From Perna viridis (taxonomy: Eukaryota): a stretch of DNA of 64,000 nucleotides. Shown piece by piece: positions 8,212 to 61,956 of this stretch. The position numbers and the translations under genes were made by a program. The notes below the pieces were generated by a model. That model had not been told where the DNA came from and ran no database searches. It saw only the letters and a list, made by a program, of their open reading frames with translations. Position 1 is the stretch's first letter. Each line of letters starts with the position of its first letter. The stretch spans positions 24,056,001-24,120,000 of the forward strand of contig CM074515.1 in NCBI GenBank assembly GCA_037379345.1, written 5' to 3'.

Positions 8212-11200
8212 TTAACAATCATCATAGTTTCTACTGGCATGTCCGACACAGTAGTACAGTACACTAGACAACAAAGCAAATGCTCCAGCACCAACAGCCA
8301 CCCAAAATCCCCATCCATAAATTAGCTGTTCCCCGGTAGAGCTTTCCTTGGTGAGTACTTCAGCATTGTGATCCAGGTAAGACTTTGCACCGAACACACA
8401 AACTGACACGGCAATCAACAGGACTGAAAAAAGCAAACATGAAGTTTATTACATGTACTTAAACTCAGGGATAAAAACTGGCATTAGCCTAGTCCCCCAT
8501 GGCTACTAGAATTTAAGATGGGCTCCCAAACTTTTGGGTAATATTTACATGTAGTTGAACATATAGCAAGTATTCAACAGAAATGTTATCTGGGATACCA
8601 GCTTGAAATTTCAAAGTTTTACCCCTGACTACAAATGTCAAGTATATGACTAAATTGATGATATATTTGAATAACAGCACTACACAAGAACATTGAATTG
8701 AAATTATACACTTTTTCAGGTTACATGTGTGCTCTAAAAAAGTCATTGAACTAATATATATACAAATTTATATCCCTAGGCTATTGTCCCTCAGATATAT
8801 CATATTCATACTATGAAAAGGTTAAAATAAGTCAATTAATCAGTTTAAATAGGCTTCTGATATTACTACTGATATATGGAGATCGATTGATTTATTACGG
8901 TTTTATGTCCTATGGTAAATATTTCATACATTTCTGGATGAGAACGGTTGACCAATCAAACAAACCCTGTTACTCTGAAACACTAAGCTGGCTCTTTCCT
9001 GTGCTAGCTCACAGAGGCAACAGCCCACAGGAAGCCATGTCACCCAAATGAGACACAAAATTCTGACTACAAACCAACTGGTCATCACTCCATCTCCTTA
9101 AAAAATATGTTTGGCAAAGGAGCAGTTACTTCCAATTTTAAAGTCTATGGTGTGACTCGGATGTGGATCAAGCCAACCACCTCTCTCACTCAAGGCAAGA
9201 TTGCTACACTTAGACTAACTAGACAGTTATGAAGGCCAAGATGATTGAGATGTGTACTTCTGGAAACTTAGTTCCAAGGGACATATCTATTACAAAATTC
9301 TAGGGATAAGAATTTCTTGGTAATATGCACTACTACATATTGTGTCCTTGGTACATACCAAGTCAGACGAAATTCTGTTCAGTATTTGATAGGAGTTGGA
9401 ACGACATAAAGAAAATTGATGGAAAAACATATTCCAGGTTAGGGTGAGGGTTGAGTGCTAAAAAACCTGTTTAACCCTGCCACATACTTTATGTGCCTGT
9501 CCCAAGCTAGGAACCTGAGCATAGCCAAGTCTTATGTTCACTTATTTGTTGAATTTTTTTGTACATATTACATGTAGGTCTATTTTCATCTTTTATGAAC
9601 AGTTTCACTTCATTTATTGTGGGGCCTTTAACAGCTTGCTAATGGTAAATTATCAGATATGAATTATGACAATTCCACTTTAAAACAGAAGAAAATCAGA
9701 TCTGATGTACAAAATGTTACTATTGTAAGTCCCAACAGAATATATAGATTAAAGGAGAATAGCACTATTGACCTATAATTCTTTTATCAAACTTAATCTG
9801 TTTTATTTAAGATTTATTTCCTCTATTTTACAGGGAAGACATGTAAGGTAAATATGAAGATTACAACTCAATTTACACTAAATACAATGTACATTGTACA
9901 TGTATATACATGCACTGTACACATACATTTGTAAATTTTTTTTATTAGTAGAAAACATTCATTCAAAACATTGTTTGAAAACACACATACAGTATATACA
10001 TGCAAGAGTAAAAATATGGCTCCATATTATATATATTTTTAATAATATAACCAGATCTGGAGGTTTGATCCCCTTTAAATTAGAAAATTGTGTAAATTTT
10101 GCACAAAAATTTGATTAAAAATGAACAAATAACAGCTTCCTTAATTAATAAAGATCTTTGGATCTGCCTGTATACCAGTATATTACTCACAGGTTAAATT
10201 AGCAAATGCTCCAGCAGCCTGATGAGCATTACACCCCTTACAGACATTGCACAATGACAACAGACCAATCAGGAGAGCCAACATGGTGGAGGCAATGGCA
10301 CAGGACATCAGTCCTTGGACTGCTTTGAACCAATCTGAAATAAATGGTGAGAAAATGGTCATTTAGTACACATTTACATCAGCTACATGTTCATGTATGA
10401 TAATAGCAAAGTTCTGATATCATGTAGCGATACATTATACATGTGTCAATTAAGGCTTTTAAAAATTATGAGTATTATAAAAAAAACCACACAATCAGGG
10501 GTTAAAAAATGATGGAGAGAGTAACTATGACAGAAAATTTAAATCAATCTTGAAATGAAAGTCGATACACATGTAGACTTGAGTATTGGCATTTCTAATT
10601 AAATTATTACCACATAAAAATACTGAAAAATTAAATTGTGAAAAGAGCAAGTAAATGTACATGTATATAATTTGATGTTGGTGATGTATATTTTTACATG
10701 TATTTGAGCAGGGTGATACATTTGTAGAGACATTGTGGCTTGCCCATTTTGACAGCTCATGTCCATTTCCTAGAGGTAACCTCTCTTTGAGTTGTACATG
10801 TACATGTATACATTGAAAATGGAAGAAATTCATAGGTCACTGAACAGTCATTATGCATAGAACTGCTTGTACATGTAGTTCTCTGTGTATTGTTAAGTTT
10901 TATGCTTGGTTGTTTTGTTCTTTACTTTAATATCGACTTTGGTTCTTTTTTCAATTACAATGTTAATTTCAACCTGTGTTATTGAAATTTGTTACCTACA
11001 TTTATTTGAGGTAAGGGAAGGGTTGAGCCCGATCAAACTAGATAGTATACAGCTCAACTACCGTCAACCAAAATACATGTGTATCTCTACAGTGGAATCC
11101 CTCATGTCCTCCACAAAAGTAAAAACTAGGACAAAATTGCTCCATTTCATTACTTTTTAGTATATTTTTCTGTCCATAACTGAGAAATACTACTAAACTG

Positions 11201-14200
11201 CTAGAACCATTAAATATACCTTGGTATAAAGACAGGAGTAGTAAACAACATACAATTTTTGAAGTGGTGCACCACCGTGGAGAATTTATACATGTACATT
11301 TATGTTGACTGTAGTGTACACACATGTACATGTACATGCAAGTACAAAATAATAACAAAAAGCTGTGGATACATGTACATGTACATTGAAATACATGTAT
11401 ATCATTCTGAATATTTCATAATCTGACCTTTAATAATTGATCATTCTATGCATGTTTTATAGAATACATGTACTTATCTCACAAAGTTTAAGATTAAAGA
11501 ATCCCTTGGTACAGTACATTATGTAATGTGCCATATGAATGTCATTGCTTTTTATCTTGGCATTTGCACAAAGACATTTTATGATATATTTTCAATAAAT
11601 CCTTTTTATATTGATACTTTTGTTTGAGTGAACAAGGTTTGCTTATCAGTCGATTTTGGATGTACATGTAGCTTACTGAAAAAAGCAGTACTCTCTCGAG
11701 GCAAATACAGCTATTTGTTAAAGTTTTTGTATTCTGTAACGATCTCAAGAGGTACATGTAAATCCAAATTCAACAGATTATTATAGTTTGTTTTATTCAG
11801 GGTTCTCCCATATGAAAATTTAACAATGATAAAAAAATTTTATGGCACAATTTTTGCTGACAAGGAAGCATTTAAGAATGAAGATATAACCATGACTAGA
11901 AAAAGTAAGGGAAGAATGAAATGACTACATGCTAACAAAACCCATTTTTTGTTTCATTAAGTAAATTCTTCCTATTTTCCTAATTTTTCTATTCCTTTAA
12001 CTAATACCATATACATTTACATGTATTACTCTGGCCTGAAAAATATGTTTCCAGAACCAATATTCAAGAAGCCATTATAATGAAACCAGTATATAAATGT
12101 AGGTGCAAACTAGACATTGCCCCTAAAGGGACTGGACTAATACCCCCGCAGCCAGTTGAACCCTTTAAATTTTAGGACCAATGTGGACATACACTGTATG
12201 ATTCATATTGGACACAATTTTTACGTTCGGATAGATTATGCAGTTTTGGCACACAATTTGCTGCCATTTCTAAAACATTCAACTTCAAACAGCAATCAGC
12301 ACTATTTTTTGCTGATAACACTAACAGAATATGACTTATTCCTGACAATATACTCATCTCCATATGGATATCTAACACTACAATTGAGTTTGACAACAAT
12401 CCCGCAAGTCCTTAAAGTAAGGAAGAGTCGAGAACAATGCATCAGACCAAGTTTTGCCACAAAATGTGTAACTTCCAACAGTCATCATTTCTACATGTAC
12501 ATTTTTTTGTTCCTGATAAAATGCATATCCCAACATGGTAATCTAAGACCCCATTAAGTTTCGTAACAATCCTGCAAATCGTTGAGGAGGAGTTGTGGAC
12601 AATGCATCAGACCAAGTTTTGCTACAAAATGTGTAACTTCCAACAGTCATCATTTCTACATGTACATTTTTTTGTTCCTGATAAAATGCATATCCCAACA
12701 TGGTAATCTAAGACCCCATTAAGTTTCGTAACAATCCTGCAAATCGTTGAGGAGGAGTTGTGGACAAGGCAACCAAGTTTTGCTACAAAATGTGTAACTT
12801 CCAACAGTCCATGAAAACTGATTTGTTCAACGTATCATAGTTTTCCTTTCCTCTTTTGTCAACAATGAGCAACTTGGCAGGTGTTTCTAGAAAAGCAGCG
12901 GATGCTTACCCTACCAGTGCACCTGGTCCATGCTCCCAGTTTTTAGTGGAGTAAGAGTTGCTCATTTACATGTACACTGTCCTTTCGTTACTTTGTACAT
13001 GTATGTAATATTTTGGTAATTTTATGTTCTTTGTTGTGTATGTCTGTTTTCCTTGTCGGTCTTTGCCCCTGGATTACATTGCACATTCTTTTGATTTCCA
13101 CTAGAATCTTGGTTCCCTTGATAACTTTTCCAACAGCCGTCATTTCTAAAATTTTTGTTTAAACATAAATTCCTGACAATATGTACATCTCAATATCATA
13201 ATCTAACACCCCATTAAGTTTCATAACAATCCTGCCAGCCTTTATGGAGGAGTTGTGGACAATGCATGTGACCAAGTTTTGCTGAAAAAATGCCTAAGTT
13301 CAACAGCCATCATTTGTACAATTGTCATCCAAACATAAATTCCTGACAGTATGCACATATCCATGTAGTTATATTACATGTACATGTTCATCCCACAAAG
13401 TTTTATAACAATGTTTCAAGCTGCTAAGAAAATAGTTCGGACAGACAGTTAGTTTGAAAACTATATACATAATGTACATGTATCCCCAAACTTTGTTTGT
13501 AGTGGTGTAAAAACATGTGCATGAATCAAATTAAAGAAGTTTACACAGGGAGGATTATTAATAAGAAGTTCATTCATGACAGAAACCTGATCTACATTCA
13601 TAAACCAGAACTAATATGGATCCAAAGCATGAGCAAACATTAACTGAACAGTCCAATTTTCTTAATCCCGGCAGACCAGCTATTGGAACATTGTACTACT
13701 TGTACATGTACATGTATAATAAGACTTGGGAAATTTTACTTTCTATTTCTTATCTATTTTTCCCACAACAAAACGATAGCATGACAGTGTAAACAAGTCA
13801 GCCATATTATTTTCAATTAAAAGTAAATTAGCAAATATCAGATGGAATACATGTAAACAATTTTAGGAGCACTTATATTTTCCTTTATTAGGTACATCAG
13901 TTTCTTTATGTTGAAAATGGTTTAATAAATGTATTCCATCTTCATTCAACTCAACGTATAAAAATAGCCACATGCATTTGGCCAAGGTTTTAATTGGCTC
14001 ACTATGAATATTTTCATCTGATTGACACATCCTACAGATTCAATTCATGGGGTAACTAATTATCAGCAATTACAGAATCATTTTCAAATTGGCTTCAATC
14101 ATAAATTTGTCATTATTAATTGGTTTACATGTTCTGAGTCAGTATTGGATGGGTTTCTCAAACAAAAAAATAATTAAAGGCTGATAACGGTAAAAGTAAA

Positions 14201-15732
14201 TCATGGCGAACAATAATCTAACAGTGGCCCTGATTCTTTAACCAATGCGGCCTGCCATGGTAAAACAGCTCTTGGAGAACCCAGTTTATTGTTGTAGTTT
14301 TTTACCCCACCATCGTCCAAGGTTAGGGTGAGGGTTGAGGGCTCACAAACATGTTTAACCCTGCCACATACTTTATGCGCCTGTCCCAAGCCAAGAACCT
14401 GTAGTCTAGTGTTTGTTGTTTTTTTGTATGATAATTGTTATTGGGTATACATGTATGTTTTTTTCTAAATATTAGGTCTTTCTTGTCATTTATGAATAGT
14501 TTCACTTCATATATTTTAGGTCCTTTTACAGCATGCTTTATGGTATGAGTTTTGTCCATCATTGAAGACAGTGTGATGACCAGTAGATGTTAAATTGTCC
14601 ACTGCTTGAATTTTGGTGGATGACTGTCTCACTGGCAATCATACCACATCTCCTATTTTTATACAATACAGAAACTGGAATTTTGGGATTGCTATTATTC
14701 AGGACATTCCTTCATGATCAACATGTGCCTTGCAATAGCACAACAATGTTTACAAGGCCAGAATAAGACAAAAATTTCTGAGTTGGTCCCTTGACAAAAA
14801 AAAAAGGGTTGCAATAACAGAGGAAAATAAAATAGGACTAAGGCCAAGAAAAAAATGTCTGTTTAGGCTTACAGTCCTCCCAAAAAATAGGTAGGTAGGC
14901 ATTTTCAATTAATATTTTTCATTTTATTTTTTTTCCACTAAAGTTGCACCTACATTTGTAAAATAGCATCATGTTTAAGTCATGAAAGTGTATAGTTTTA
15001 AGTAGAAAGTTTAATTTTTAACATACGCACCTATTAATCATGTCTTTTATTACAATACACTTATTTTTTGTAGGAATTTTGAACAAAATATAAGTACACT
15101 GTATTTTTAAATCTTACCTGCAAATATATTCAAACGCCATTGTGACCTGGTTTTAAACATACTTTCGGTTTTACCGGAAATGATCTATATTATACTGGAA
15201 ATTGGTCGAAATTACCGATTTTGTAAATTTTTGAGAAAAAATGTATTAAGGTCAGGAGAAAAAAATTATGGTCGGTCGGGAAACCTGAAACAGACATATT
15301 TTTATTTTTGGCCTAAATAAAATGACACACACTTTTAAGGGAAGATAAAAAAATCCGATATTATTGTACTAATGATAATGTACAAATGTTCATGTACAAA
15401 TACAATTATGAACCACACCCATTAACACTCAAGCAATTAACAGACCAGTTCTACATTTCACCCCCTTTTGTATGATCAGTACCTGGTAGACTTTTCTCAA
15501 TAAAAAAGTTATCAGAGAAGAACCATCGACAGTTGTCTAATATTCCTGTAGAAGCAGATCCACCAAGGCAGTTGATCCACAAACCACAATCGCAGTTGTT
15601 GTTTTGACACATGCACAAGTTGTCTATTTTGTTTACAAAGTGTAACCAGTTCGGCATCGCAAAACAAACTATAGTGGCTACCGTAGTGATAAGAACACAG
15701 AGAACAGCTGTAACAACAAGACAGGATGCCAT
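8212..15732 (-). CDS. Claudin/PMP22/EMP-superfamily tetraspan membrane protein, 3 coding exons (15483-15732, 10191-10334, 8212-8423), 201 aa
   Basis: Exons join in frame at GT-AG sites (CCAG|gtactg, tttcag|ATTGG, ACCT|gtgagt, tttcag|TCCTG), total 606 nt. Four hydrophobic helices. First loop has the claudin signature W...GLW..C...C (PNW...CGLWINC...NC), then DWFKAVQGLM, and YGWGFWVAVGA before TM4. Confidence 0.9.
8886..9222 (-). mobile_element. Degenerate tRNA-derived SINE
   Basis: Decayed tRNA-like head near 9222-9150 (minus strand, ending ...gagtcacaccatagactttaaaattgg) and a SINE-type tail ending in aatcaatc near 8890. Boundaries approximate. Confidence 0.45.
9435..9517 (+). ncRNA. Twister-ribozyme-like motif (type P5 permutation) in a dispersed repeat, copy A
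   Basis: P5 CAGGTT/AACCTG; P2' AGGG; TGAGGG; T|AA at 9472/9473; P2 CCCT; GC; P3 CACATA/TATGTG; P4 CCT/AGG enclosing GTCCCAAGCT (twister L4 GUCCCAAGCC). Repeat body continues to about 9650. Confidence 0.65.
12106..13513 (+). mobile_element. Non-autonomous Helitron/Helentron (pearl-like) element with internal ~165-bp tandem repeats
   Basis: Subterminal tacccccgca at 12141; near-identical units starting at 12435 and 12600 (period 165) plus diverged units; gacagacag remnant at about 13440; decayed 3' hairpin ccccaaactttgtttgtagtggtgtaaaaa. The layout matches bivalve pearl/HINE elements. Confidence 0.65.
12810..13128 (+). mobile_element. 3' end of a Penelope-like element inserted in the Helentron repeat
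   Basis: Starts with atgaaaactgatttgttcaacgtatcatag (MKTDLFNVS*), homologous to the ORF end at 46380. Followed by the shared tail ending gaatcttggttcccttgataactt. ttccaacag occurs on both sides (candidate TSD). Confidence 0.75.
14320..14400 (+). ncRNA. Twister-ribozyme-like motif (type P5), copy B; repeat body extends to about 14662
   Basis: P5 AGGTT/AACCT; AGGG-TGAGGG; T|AA at 14356/14357; CCCT; GC; P3 CACATA/TATGCG; CCT-GTCCCAAGCC-AAG. Near-identical to 9435-9517. Confidence 0.62.
14842..15313. mobile_element. PIF/Harbinger-type MITE
   Basis: taa|ggccaagaaaaaaatgtctgtttagg ... cctgaaacagacatatttttatttttggcc|taa: imperfect TIRs, GG..CC ends, 3-bp TAA duplication. Confidence 0.7.
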
Positions 15733-42478: not shown

Positions 42479-42800
42479 GGCCAGATTTTAAAGGGACAGG
42501 GAGTGGTCACGTCAAATTACTTTAACGCCGCCGCATTTTTTGTGCATGTTCACAAGTCAGGAGTTTCTAGCCTTTGTATGTCTCGTTTTGTTTTCACCTT
42601 CGCTTTATTTTCATGTTACTTGAGTATATAGGGGCAACTCTTTCGTTGTACCTGTGTATAAAGATGTTTTTGGGCCAGCTCCAGCCTGCCCTGTGGTGTA
42701 ATGGTTTCCTTGAAGACCAATTGGTGGCTTTGCGCTGATATTTTCAACCCGGTGGTGTTGTTGTGTCTTTGATATATTCACCAAACATATTCTCGTTATA
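42479..42800 (+). mobile_element. Dispersed repeat (second family) starting with a degenerate twister-like motif (42479-42572)
   Basis: ggccaga...aagggacaggg-agtggt/attact hairpin-ttaa-cgcc-gc-cgca/tgtg-catgttcacaagtcagg...tctagcc. Homologous to the minus-strand copy at 60767-60863. Confidence 0.55.
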
Positions 42801-59627: not shown

Positions 59628-61956
59628 TTGTTGGCGTAAGTTATTCCATCCGAACCACACACTTTTTGAGTATCTCCAGTACAGATAACAATATCCTTGT
59701 TTTCACAGAATATTTTTTGTATTTCATCTTGAGTTGGCACAGGTGTAGTAGGTTTTCTTGTTGTCGCTGGTTGAGTCAGTTTCATAGTTGTTATTTTGGT
59801 TGTCGGTGTTGTTGTTGGTTGTAGGGTTGTTGTTGGTTGTCGGGTTGTTGGCGTTGTTGTTGGTTGTTGGGTAGTTGACATTACCGTTTTTGATGTAACG
59901 ATAGGTTTGATCGATGATGGACCCTGCGTTGTGGCAACAACTGTGTTTGACATCGACGATTGTTTAGATGTACTCGTTAATGGAGGTATTGTTGTACTTA
60001 GTAAACACATGTAAGCTGTATCTAATTGTATACTGTTATCTGCACACTGGGCTTGATCGAAAAAACAGCTGAGAGAAGTAAAAATTTAAACAAGATTCAT
60101 TTCAATATAGGCAGATCTTTTAAGTTTTCCTAGAATTATATAAGTCCTATGAATGTAAAACTCAGAATAACCCCAGGGGATTGACAGAATCTCTTCATCT
60201 TCTAACATTTACTTTATCCGTTTTAGAGTACAAACAATTGAATTTGGCAAAATGGTCATATCCAGCACTAGAACGACACAATAAACCACATTGTCAGCCA
60301 ACAAAAATGAGTGTTGCTAATGCTTAAGTCAATGACATGAATGGTTCATTATAGGATGTAATCTCTTCATCGCCCATCCTAAAGCAAGTGTGTACCCACT
60401 GGTAAGATTAGAATAAAACCATCGTTAATGTTGAAATGATGTCTTCCTGTTTTACCCAAGGCAATGTATAAATATGCGCTCCCTTTGAAATTAACAAAAT
60501 AGACAAAAAAATTATAGTCAGTTAGATTTATTTATCAAACGAATGGTTCAATAGAGCCTGTTCGCTTTAGACTGAGATCCATGTAATGGAAATTTATAGG
60601 CTTTAAGAAAAATGTCACCTCAAGGCCATCCATGGGTTTTTAATGAACACTCCACAGGGCAGGTTGCATCTGATCCCAAAATAACATTATACACCGAAAT
60701 ATTTCCCCTGTATATTCCAGCAACATAAAAGTAAACTGAAAGTGTTAACGAAACAATACAAACATAGGCCAGAATTTCCTGACTTGGGACAGGCCCCTTA
60801 AAAAAATTGCTGCGGGGTTTGAGTACTTTGGTATGATCACTACCCTCCCCGTTTTTAAAATATATTTGTTTGTTTGTTTGTTGGGGTTTAACGTCCGAGC
60901 AGCAATATTTCAGCTATATTTAGACGATGAACATGAAATTGATGATAAAATGAACATGAAATGATGATGAAATGAAAAAGGGATGGGACACAAGGACAAT
61001 GGGGTCGACAAATTTTGATTGCCACTGGAAATAGGGAGAGGTGGGTAGGGTCAGGCAATTTAGCCTCCTGTGGCGGAGCCCTATGGTTCCTACTCCGGGA
61101 GAATACCACAGTAGGGTTCCTTAACGTGCGAGGAACGTGGCATCTTTCCCAACACGGTGCACCACTATGGTTTGCGGTCAGGTTTTCCGTATTATAGCCT
61201 GACAACCCCAGCATGTAACACGCCAGGGGTACCCCATTCCACCACCTGGGGCACACATTCTAGTTGCTCTGTGGGCAGAGCGCCCTAGCCCCCGGCTTAG
61301 CACTATTTAGTCGCCTTTTACGACAAGCCGGTTTTAAAATATGGCCACTGTGGAGAACATATTCAGTAACTACATACAGTGACTGAATGGAATCATTGAT
61401 AGGTCTAATTTTGATGAGACTGACAATTAAACACACCTAAAAATCAGTTAAAAGATATCCGAAACCCTTGATAAACATATATAAAGGAACAGATTATATA
61501 GGTTACACGAAGGAACGTTAACTGTAATGCCAGCTCCAGACCATTTTAAACCTACAAGAACTTATGCCCTCACGTATATCTTTCCAAATTCTTCCATTGA
61601 GGATTTGAGAACCACTGTACATCATAAGTCATACAATGGGGATACAAATAATGTCATGCCGAAAACTCATTTTAAACGTAGTATTTTATTTCTGTGTAAA
61701 GACCCTGTAAGTGAATCAATTTTGATACTAAAAAATTACATCTTTAACGATTTGACAACAATATCATAACAATAACTCTTACGAATAAAATATGGTTACA
61801 TTTATACATCTTACAAATTTTTGTAAACGTTTCCCTTTGTATCACAGACTCGCTCATCCGAATCCACAGTCATAGTACTACAGTCCAGGTTCACGATTTC
61901 TCTACATAAATCTTGATGACTAACGGTAGCGTATACCCCATATAGTATTGTCACAC
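59628..61956 (-). CDS. Kazal-mucin paralog K1, two open exons (61815-61956, 59628-60068); first and last coding exons not located
   Basis: VTILYGVYATVSHQDLCREIVNLDC..DERVCDTKGNVYKNF|CFFDQAQCADNSIQLDTAYMC, T/P-rich stalk, then IFCENKDIVICTGDTQKVCGSDGITYAN|gtaagt. Same exon phases as K3. Confidence 0.78.
60767..60863 (-). mobile_element. Second-family repeat with twister-like motif, interrupted by the 60864-61331 insertion
   Basis: Minus strand: (ggccata)ttttaaaaacggggaggg...aaaccccgc...cctgtcccaagtcaggaaattctggcc. The host sequence resumes at 61343. Confidence 0.6.
60864..61331 (-). mobile_element. Young ~470-bp SINE-like retroposon with 11-bp TSD, Nin/Deu-like central motif, (CAAA)n tail and no tRNA head
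   Basis: TSD ttttaaaatat at 60853-60863 and 61332-61342; GC-rich body; gcacgttaaggaaccc...gagtagg; tail atatagctgaaatattgct...gacgttaaaccccaa(caaa)n. Confidence 0.85.

What the first reader, a model, noticed from the sequence alone, without database searches (positions are those of the whole stretch)
9435..9517. Dispersed repeat encoding a circularly permuted (P5-type) twister ribozyme: candidate twister 'retrozyme'
Seen: twister landmarks in P5-permuted order: closing stem CAGGTT/AACCTG, P2' AGGG, (T)GAGGG, T|AA, P2 CCCT, GC, a perfect 6-bp P3, and P4 CCT/AGG around GTCCCAAGCT. Both pseudoknots are possible (CCC with GGG; GC with GC). Established: the rice twister reads UAA-CACU-GC...CCG-GUCCCAAGCC-CGG...AGUG-GAGGG; twisters occur with non-LTR retroelements, and hammerhead-bearing retrozymes occur in animals. 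Inference: this short non-coding repeat is a self-cleaving non-autonomous retroelement that uses twister rather than hammerhead, possibly mobilised by the abundant local PLEs. I do not know of this being described for molluscan repeats, but cannot check. Weak point: P1 next to the cleavage site does not pair canonically.
Basis: partly seen in the sequence, partly recalled or inferred. Interest (0 to 1): 0.85.

Follow-up and report, generated by a model that had tools for sequence, protein, structure and literature searches.

The report
Permuted twister ribozyme module in repeats
The 83-base stretch is a decayed copy of a very abundant non-coding mobile repeat whose original sequence carried a rearranged (circularly permuted) version of the known self-cutting "twister" RNA, but nothing here shows that it still cuts or that it makes RNA circles.

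Summary

- **The repeat.** The block belongs to an abundant non-coding repeat (450 to 2,600 first-look candidates). Copies share a fixed 3' end and have ragged 5' ends. Each element carries one block.
- **Fit to twister.** The family majority fits twister better than the window copy does. It has every conserved loop letter, P2 GGGG/CCCC, a 4-bp P4 around UCCCAAGC, P3, a 6-bp closing P5 and both pseudoknots.
- **Second family.** A second abundant family, also in this window, keeps the same conserved letters with a different P5, P3 and P1-region sequence.
- **Related elements.** The genome also holds ordinary P1-type twisters.

I therefore read the block as a genuine type-P5 twister module of mobile elements.

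Against activity:
- No Rfam model reaches its cut-off.
- Family 1 has no P1, and its predicted best fold buries the cleavage site.
- Copies decay neutrally.
- RNA reads show no ends at the predicted cut and no circle junctions.

The "retrozyme" reading is not supported: there is one ribozyme per element, no tandem or LTR layout, and no link to Penelope-like elements was seen.

Other first-stage readers of this scan flagged the same motif elsewhere in this genome. Cleavage remains untested.

The parts
9435..9440 (+). P5 5' strand (CAGGTT); pairs with 9512-9517
   Evidence: Paired in 83% of cells across 29 distinct copies.
9441..9445 (+). P2' AGGG plus an extra U at 9445. The family majority has GGGG or AGGG directly before GAGGG.
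9446..9450 (+). L1 3' strand GAGGG. Its GGG is complementary to CCC of L4 (pseudoknot T1).
9451..9471 (+). P1 position. There is no canonical P1. This copy holds a decayed form of the family palindrome TGAGCGCTCA.
9472..9474 (+). U|AA; the predicted scissile bond lies between 9472 and 9473
   Evidence: and the alignment to the Rfam twister-P1 consensus
9475..9480 (+). P2 CCCT, then L2 GC (pseudoknot T2 with GC 9506-9507)
9481..9495 (+). P3 hairpin CACATA-CTT-TATGTG
9496..9511 (+). P4 CCTG/TAGG (inner pair G.U in this copy) around L4 TCCCAAGC
9512..9517 (+). P5 3' strand AACCTG
9435..9647 (+). Family-1 repeat copy A. It starts exactly at the block, is 78% identical to the family majority, and has lost its 3' part.
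14285..14659 (+). Family-1 repeat copy B (majority positions 389-751). Its twister-like block is at 14320-14401, and it runs to the family 3' end.
11471..11797 (+). 5' part of a family-1 element (majority positions 35-394). It is probably the other half of copy B, split by a 2.5-kb insertion.
42479..42572 (+). Family-2 copy of the same permuted twister module (decayed). Its P5 is GGCCAGA/TCTAGCC.
60767..60862 (-). Family-2 copy. GAGGG, CCCC, GC and CCTG-TCCCAAGT-CAGG are intact.
   Evidence: (24.8 bits, E 3.4e-5)

Best explanation
The 83 bases are one decayed, 5'-truncated copy of an old, abundant, non-coding interspersed repeat. Complete copies are about 0.75 to 1.2 kb, with a fixed 3' end and ragged 5' ends. 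That pattern fits copying from the 3' end by a borrowed reverse transcriptase.

The founding sequence of the repeat carried a genuine twister-class self-cleaving ribozyme in the circularly permuted, P5-closed order: P5 - P2' - GAGGG - (P1 position) - U|AA - P2 - GC - P3 - P4/L4 - P5'. The same module, with different P5, P3 and P1-region letters, sits in a second abundant repeat family.

Inferred mechanism: in transcripts of source copies the module folds through P5, P2, P4 and the two pseudoknots. It then cuts between U and A (9472/9473 in this copy), which splits the element RNA into a 5' piece and a 3' piece of about 300 nt that carries the 3' tail.

Shown: the sequence anatomy, the abundance, the sharing between two families, and the neutral decay of copies. 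Inferred: catalysis and its role in the element's life cycle. The window copy itself is probably weak or dead.
For: 1. Family-1 majority. From 30 copies chosen by the block and 30 chosen by the whole element, it reads: CAGGTT-A-GGGG-GAGGG-...-T|AA-CCC(C/T)-GC-CACATA CTT TATGTG-CCTG-TCCCAAGC-CAGG-AACCTG. Every conserved twister loop letter is present, as are a 4-bp P2, a 4-bp P4, an exact L4, and T1 and T2. The T at the last P2 position follows a CpG-decay pattern from CCCCG.
2. Rfam twister-P1. It aligns the UAA-P2-GC-P3-P4-L4 half letter for letter. It fails only where the permutation moves GAGGG.
3. Family 2. It has 29 and 128 exact pattern hits, against 0 for the reversed-pattern control. 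It keeps GGGG-GAGGG, T|AA-CCCC-GC and CCTG-TCCCAAGT-CAGG. It closes with a different 7-bp P5, GGCCAGA/TCTGGCC; at the homologous pair, family 1 has G-C and family 2 has A-U. Its P3 is also different (CGCA..GCG). My family-1 covariance model finds the family-2 copies in the window at E 3.4e-5 and 0.022.
4. Context in the genome. It holds canonical P1-type twisters: 56 RF03160 hits at 24-57 bits, E down to 7e-10. Their P2 is CUCC/GGAG, so P2 covaries between the two classes.
5. Chance. The core pattern has 0 matches in shuffles. Of 80 chance matches examined in prokaryotes, none had both P2 and P4.
6. Fold. With the conserved loops kept unpaired, the minimum-energy fold of an intact copy is exactly P5+P2+P3+P4.
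7. Literature. P1 is dispensable and P1/P2 imperfections are tolerated (PMC11662667). Twisters process non-LTR retroelement RNA in Schistosoma (PMC8501958).
Against: - No Rfam family reaches its gathering score in the window. The best match is twister-P1 at 14.3 bits, E 3.6, or 20.7 bits in a better copy. RF02684 (type P5) found nothing in the genome, although its control also found nothing anywhere.
- Family 1 has no P1. Its unconstrained best fold (-28.7 against -19.6 kcal/mol) pairs GGGUUGAGCG with UGUUUAACCC, which buries the cleavage site.
- There is no covariation among copies: 87.7% of cells are paired, the same as in the shuffles. In an unbiased sample the block is no better conserved than the rest of the element. 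The copies therefore carry no sign of selection.
- Two raw-read RNA runs show low, two-strand coverage. 96% of the laid reads continue into unlike sequence. There is no pile-up of starts or ends at the predicted cut, and no RNA-only back-joints.
- Only 4 exact intact cores were found genome-wide with a strict pattern. Six of the 57 blocks I held keep the core plus the helices.
- The window copy has an inserted U between P2' and GAGGG.
- The cross-family covariation rests on two families. One of its changes (P3 pair 2) can arise by two CpG deaminations.
Confidence: 0.6

Rival explanations
1. Twister-derived but catalytically retired. The module descends from a twister, but the repeat families keep it for another reason. 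Possible reasons are a compact structured domain or palindrome used for RNA dimerisation, reverse-transcriptase recognition or stability, or a DNA-level protein site. On this reading it does not self-cleave.
For: - Family 1 has no P1, and a stable alternative helix sequesters UAA.
- A palindrome sits just after GAGGG-UU in both families and differs by compensatory changes: TGAGCGCTCA against GTGATCAC.
- RNA reads show no cleavage signature.
- Rfam models fail.
Against: - All catalytic and pseudoknot letters (GAGGG, U|AA, GC, UCCCAAGC) are retained in the founders of two families that have diverged elsewhere. That is hard to explain without selection for the twister active site.
- P1 is dispensable in tested twisters (PMC11662667).
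Confidence: 0.22
2. Twister retrozyme. The repeat is transcribed, cut at two ribozyme sites, circularised, and the circle is the template for retrotransposition, possibly by Penelope-like elements.
For: - The repeat is non-coding, non-autonomous and abundant, and carries a self-cleaving-type motif with an internal cleavage site.
- Hammerhead retrozymes exist in molluscs (PMC7761336).
Against: - There is one block per element, including the longest copies, and no tandem unit-length arrays or LTR-like repeats carrying it.
- Ragged 5' ends with a fixed 3' end fit linear 3'-primed copying.
- No RNA-specific 'goes back' joints were seen; the only such joint with any RNA reads (2 reads) also stands in DNA contigs.
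- No link to Penelope-like elements was found.
Confidence: 0.06
3. Chance resemblance: an ordinary repeat that happens to look like a twister.
For: No covariance-model hit at curated thresholds. The fold z-score of the window copy is not significant (-0.96).
Against: - 18 to 19 fixed letters plus four helices and two pseudoknots fall in the right order and spacing.
- There are 0 matches in shuffles.
- The chance matches examined lack the helices.
- A second family preserves the same letters with a different P5.
Confidence: 0.03

Closest known systems
Type-P5 (circularly permuted) twister ribozymes, Rfam RF02684, clan CL00120
   Same: The order of elements is the same: the RNA opens in P5 and the P1 position is internal. 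The conserved L1, L2 and L4 letters, P2, P4, an optional P3, and pseudoknots T1 and T2 are all present.
   Different: - It is not detected by the Rfam models at their thresholds.
- P1 is absent in family 1. In family 2 it is reduced to 3 bp after two U.U mismatches.
- A palindrome occupies the P1 5' side.
- It is carried by animal interspersed repeats in hundreds to thousands of copies.
- Activity is untested.
Twister variants (T-variants) at the 5' end of Perere-3/RTE non-LTR retrotransposons of Schistosoma mansoni (PMC8501958); truncated twisters in RTE 5' ends (PMC7761336)
   Same: Both are twister-class motifs multiplied by a retroelement. P1 is poor or absent yet tolerated. GAGGG is followed by UUG in both.
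   Different: - Those are P1-type motifs at the element's 5' end, cutting upstream of the element body, and the elements encode RT and endonuclease.
- Here the module is permuted, lies 420-860 nt from the 5' end of complete copies, cuts inside the element, and the element has no ORF.
- This genome's own P1-type twisters (P2 CUCC/GGAG) resemble the Schistosoma ones far more than the block does.
Metazoan retrozymes and Penelope-like-element hammerheads (PMC7761336)
   Same: Both involve small self-cleaving motifs in non-autonomous, non-coding animal repeats. Those hammerheads need dimers, and here a conserved palindrome hints at dimer formation.
   Different: The ribozyme class is different. Retrozymes carry two or more ribozymes (tandem or LTR) and accumulate as circRNAs. 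Here there is a single motif per element and no circle junctions were seen.
Central conserved domains of SINE superfamilies (e.g. MESC, V, Nin-DC; PMC4758252)
   Same: A module of about 100 nt is shared by otherwise unalignable non-autonomous repeat families within one genome.
   Different: No tRNA head was found, and the elements are longer than typical SINEs. The shared module here has a recognisable ribozyme architecture. I could not compare it with published domain sequences.

Membership tests
Twister ribozyme (clan CL00120), type P5 | Conserved loop nucleotides: N|AA, GC (L2), (G)UCCCAAGC(C) (L4), GAGGG (L1) | tested here: met
   All are present in the family-1 majority and in the window copy. 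The window copy has the L4-flanking C changed to U and an extra U before GAGGG. Family 2 has UCCCAAGU.
Twister ribozyme (clan CL00120), type P5 | P2 and P4 helices and complementarity for pseudoknots T1 (GGG/CCC) and T2 (GC/GC) | tested here: met
   85-91% of cells are paired per helix across 29 distinct copies, against 23-46% when the partners are slid by 1-3 columns. P2 is CCCC/GGGG here and CUCC/GGAG in the genome's P1-type twisters.
Twister ribozyme (clan CL00120), type P5 | Closing helix P5 that joins the two ends of the permuted motif, supported by covariation | tested here: inconclusive
   P5 is 6 bp in family 1 and 7 bp in family 2. There is one compensatory pair (G-C against A-U), and family 2 has an outward extension. 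Only two families are available, and there is no covariation within either family.
Twister ribozyme (clan CL00120), type P5 | P1 helix abutting the cleavage site | tested here: not met
   Family 1 has no canonical pairs in register. Family 2 has U.U, U.U, then G-C, U-A, G.U. The literature says P1 is dispensable (PMC11662667).
Twister ribozyme (clan CL00120), type P5 | Score at or above the Rfam gathering threshold | tested here: not met
   The best match is the twister-P1 model at 14.3-20.7 bits against a cut-off of 67.2. RF02684 gave no hit, and its control was silent too.
Twister ribozyme (clan CL00120), type P5 | Site-specific Mg2+-dependent self-cleavage at N|A | not testable with these tools
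   The RNA-seq proxy shows no pile-up of read ends at the predicted site, at depths of about 14-39. This is not decisive.
Retrozyme | Two or more ribozyme copies per unit (LTR-borne or tandem) that allow excision of a monomer | tested here: not met
   One block per locus. A full-model scan of 12 loci, including 10-kb stretches, found one block each.
Retrozyme | Circular RNA with a junction at the ribozyme cleavage site | tested here: not met
   No back-joints specific to the RNA runs X9 and X10. The libraries are ordinary RNA-seq, so the test has weak power.
5'-terminal processing ribozyme of non-LTR retrotransposons (RTE twister, R2 HDV-like) | Ribozyme at the element's 5' end, cutting upstream of the element body, in an element that encodes RT | tested here: not met
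   The block lies about 420 nt (750-nt form) to 860 nt from the 5' end of long copies. The cleavage site is internal, and there is no ORF of 110 aa or more. However, 5 of 57 copies begin within 8 nt of the block start.

The most novel reading that the evidence does not exclude
The module is a dimer-dependent, P1-less permuted twister. P1 has been replaced by a self-complementary segment just after GAGGG-UU. That segment differs between the two repeat families by compensatory changes, including the central pair, which cannot form within one strand. Two element RNAs would therefore have to pair, or domain-swap, to build the active site, as Penelope/retrozyme hammerheads do. This would be a ribozyme module shared like a SINE 'core domain' across repeat families.
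Probability: 0.15. Interest if true: 0.75.

Novelty: new variant of a known kind. Interest (0 to 1): 0.55.

Why it matters
Twisters are known in bacteria and in animal retroelements, but their biological role is established only for 5'-end processing of one Schistosoma retrotransposon.

If the module is active, this would be a permuted, P1-less twister carried in the middle of two abundant non-autonomous repeat families of a mollusc. It would widen the known architectures of natural twisters. It would also show that Rfam-type searches miss whole families. And it would give a tractable system, with hundreds of natural variants, to ask what an internal cut does for a mobile element and whether a palindrome can stand in for P1 through dimerisation.

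If it is inactive, it is a well-dated fossil showing how ribozyme modules are shuffled between repeats.

Tried and rejected
- **Rfam scans.** Gathering scan of the whole window: nothing. Permissive scans of the block, of 20 other copies and of family 2 gave only weak twister-P1 half-matches.
- **RF02684 on the whole genome.** No hit, but the control genomes were silent too, so this is uninformative.
- **Natural P5/P3-type twisters from prokaryote contigs.** I sought them with an exact core pattern to build an independent model. All 80 stretches I read were chance matches lacking P2 and P4. That was useful only as a null.
- **Covariation among family-1 copies.** None, as expected for neutrally decaying copies.
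- **Excess conservation of the block.** It appeared in the sample chosen by the block and vanished in the sample chosen by the whole element. It was a selection artefact.
- **Target-site duplications.** None convincing.
- **tRNA head or ORFs.** None.
- **Second ribozyme copy in long elements.** None.
- **Further permuted families with another P2.** Only decayed family-1 and family-2 copies turned up.
- **P1-type twisters within the 307 kb I held.** None.
- **Literature search for the block's letters.** Nothing relevant.
- **RNA evidence for cleavage or circles.** None.
- **Limit reached.** I could not fetch unbiased copies to map 5' ends, the P1-type twister loci, or more family-2 flanks. After that I relied on the short matched strings that pattern searches print.
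Full report
**Observation**

- CAGGTT, AGGG, T, GAGGG
- a 21-nt unpaired stretch
- T|AA, CCCT, GC
- a perfect 6-bp hairpin
- CCTG-TCCCAAGC-TAGG
- AACCTG

The minimum-energy fold recovers P5, an extended P2, P3 and P4. It is no more stable than shuffled sequence (z = -0.96).

A second copy lies at 14320-14401. The core pattern occurs 3 times in the window and never in 100 shuffles.

As an empirical null, I read 80 of the chance matches of the same 19-letter pattern in 596 Gb of prokaryote contigs. Two had a complementary P2, and none had P2 together with P4.

**Covariance models**

- No Rfam family reaches its curated score in the window.
- Permissive scans give only the twister-P1 model, at 14.3 bits on the window copy and 20.7 bits on a better copy.
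- In both cases the UAA-P2-GC-P3-P4-L4 half aligns almost letter for letter. The other half fails because GAGGG lies upstream.
- The type-P5 model RF02684 found nothing in the genome. Its control genomes were silent too, so that result is uninformative.

**The repeat**

- First-look candidate counts in the genome were 450 with the 83-nt query, 2,649 with a 766-nt query and 2,183 with the 3' part only.
- Copies share a sharp 3' end (...GGCAATCATACCACATCTCCTATTTTTATAT) about 340 nt after the block start.
- The 5' ends are ragged, from the block itself back to about -855. The longest shared homology is about 1.2 kb, with internal duplications upstream of about 230 nt.
- I found no tRNA-like head, no ORF of 110 aa or more and no convincing target-site duplications.
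- Each element has exactly one block.
- Depth of DNA contigs rises towards the 3' end. This fits 3'-primed copying with 5' truncation.
- The window copy A (9435-9647) starts at the block, is about 78% identical to the family majority, and has lost its 3' part.
- Copy B (14285-14659) is probably the 3' half of an element whose 5' half is 11471-11797. A 2.5-kb insertion appears to split them.

**The family majority fits twister better than the window copy**

Two samples of 30 copies give this majority: CAGGTT-A-GGGG-GAGGG-TTGAGCGCTCACAAACATGTT-T|AA-CCC(C/T)-GC-CACATA CTT TATGTG-CCTG-TCCCAAGC-CAGG-AACCTG.
- L4 and its closing pair match the rice twister P4/L4 pattern (PMC11662667).
- P2 is GGGG/CCCC, with a C-to-T change in CpG context.
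- GAGGG follows P2' directly.

The window copy has a G-to-T change that inserts a U between P2' and GAGGG.

Of the 57 blocks I held, 12 keep all the invariant letters. Six of those, including window copy A, also keep the helices. A strict pattern finds only 4 intact cores genome-wide.

**No signal within the family**

- Paired cells are 87.7%, identical to the column-shuffled control.
- The block looked better conserved in the sample chosen by the block. In the sample chosen by the whole element it is no better conserved than its surroundings, 0.85-0.92 everywhere.
- The copies therefore decay neutrally and say nothing for or against function.

**A second family**

My family-1 model finds that site (E 0.022) and 60767-60862 on the minus strand (24.8 bits, E 3.4e-5).

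Pattern searches of the genome print the matched letters. They gave 29 and 128 exact hits, against 0 for the reversed-pattern control.

The family-2 majority reads: CACAGT-GGCCAGA-TTTTAAA-GGGG-GAGGG-TT-GTGATCAC-GCCAAAGTACTT-T|AA-CCCC-GC-CGCA TTTTTT GCG-CCTG-TCCCAAGT-CAGG-AATT-TCTGGCC.

All conserved twister letters are kept. The rest differs:
- **P5.** It is 7 bp. At the homologous pair, family 1 has G-C and family 2 has A-U. Family 2 also adds three outer pairs.
- **P3.** Pair 2 is A-U in family 1 and G-C in family 2. Two CpG deaminations could produce this change.
- **P1.** Family 2 has a weak P1 in register (U.U, U.U, G-C, U-A, G.U).
- **Flanks.** They are not alignable between the families.

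A search for further permuted families with a different P2 found only decayed copies of these two.

**Context in the genome**

- The twister-P1 model gives 56 full-length hits at 24-57 bits, with E down to 7e-10. None reaches the 67.2-bit cut-off.
- Exact-pattern hits show P2 CUCC/GGAG, as in the Schistosoma twisters tabulated in PMC8501958.
- Twisters are therefore resident in this genome. P2 differs between the two classes by a compensated change.

**Arguments against activity**

- Family 1 lacks P1.
- In near-intact copies the best fold pairs GGGUUGAGCG with UGUUUAACCC, which buries U|AA (-28.7 kcal/mol). The twister nested structure scores -19.6 kcal/mol. That structure becomes the best fold only when the conserved loops are held open. 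Pseudoknots are not scored in these calculations.
- RNA evidence is negative. I laid two raw-read RNA runs on the best family-1 copy (L032; block 1922-2004; predicted cut 1959/1960).
  - Depth is low and comes from both orientations.
  - 96% of the laid reads continue into unlike sequence, which suggests passive transcription of scattered copies.
  - There are no places where molecules begin or end.
  - The only back-joint with any RNA reads (2 reads) also stands in DNA contigs.
  - These are ordinary libraries and most copies are dead, so this is weak evidence.

**Literature**

- Twisters at the 5' end of Perere-3/RTE elements process retroelement RNA (PMC8501958).
- Truncated twisters in RTE 5' ends are mentioned in PMC7761336.
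- P1 is dispensable, and P1, P2 and P4 imperfections are tolerated. Twister candidates were predicted in gastropods and bivalves (PMC11662667).
- I found no description of a permuted twister in molluscan repeats. That paper's supplements were not available to me.

**Palindrome**

Just after GAGGG-U(U), family 1 has TGAGCGCTCA and family 2 has GTGATCAC. Aligned as GAGCGCTC against GTGATCAC, pairs 2-7 and 4-5 differ by compensatory changes. The central pair cannot form within one strand. This hints at an intermolecular duplex or a DNA-level site. Other first-stage notes (s1-776400, s1-766558) raised the dimer idea. I could not test it.

**Verdict**

The block is best read as a genuine, circularly permuted twister module that was multiplied by two non-autonomous repeat families. 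The window copy is a decayed member. Catalysis is plausible but unproven. The retrozyme reading, with circles and mobilisation by Penelope-like elements, is not supported. Other first-stage readers noted the same motif in other windows of this genome.

Noticed in passing
G000 genome-wide, e.g. G000:C2:53654043-53654103, C10:24851628-24851687, C5:19157984-19158042: The genome holds dozens of canonical P1-type twister candidates. RF03160 gives 56 hits at 24-57 bits, with E down to 7e-10; all are below the 67.2-bit cut-off. Their P2 is CUCC/GGAG, as in Schistosoma RTE-associated twisters. I could not fetch their surroundings.
   Followed up: partly
window 11798-14284 (with 12338-13379): A stretch of about 2.5 kb holds a 165-170-bp tandem repeat (5 or more units). 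It appears to be inserted into a family-1 element, splitting it into 11471-11797 (majority positions 35-394) and 14285-14659 (389-751). The 5-position overlap could be a target duplication.
   Followed up: no
L030:1800-2830; L032 joints 2005>1971 and 2016>1981 in DNA contigs: The L4-P4'-P5 part of the block plus about 20 nt downstream has been amplified into tandem arrays with a period of about 36-39 nt at some loci. This inflates DNA depth over that half of the block.
   Followed up: partly
window 9435; L008, L017, L030, L006 (block start): Five of the 57 family-1 copies begin within 8 nt of the block's first base. That is more than a smooth 5'-truncation gradient predicts (rough Poisson p about 0.01). 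The sample was chosen by the block and is small.
   Followed up: partly
family 1: window 9452-9461 region; family 2: window 42505-42512 region: A palindrome directly after GAGGG-U(U) is kept in both families with different letters: TGAGCGCTCA against GTGATCAC. They differ by two compensatory pair changes, including the central pair.
   Followed up: partly
window 11003-11108 (+): A weak hit of the family-1 model (15 bits, E 0.034) shares only the 5' half (GAGGTAAGGGAAGGGTTGAGC...). It may be a third, more decayed relative.
   Followed up: no
L005, L012, L013: Three loci on two contigs (C4, C10, C9... as listed) share 93-98% identity over at least 2.3 kb around a family-1 copy. These are segmental duplicates, not independent insertions.
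   Followed up: no
upstream of the block, majority ...CACTGTCCCAGGTTAGGGG: The letters just 5' of P2' (CTGTCCC-AGG-TTA) resemble P4/L4/P4' with AAGCC deleted. The letters 3' of the block (GTAGTCCAGTGGTTG) loosely resemble P2'-GAGGG-TTG. The permutation may have arisen from an old tandem pair of twisters.
   Followed up: no
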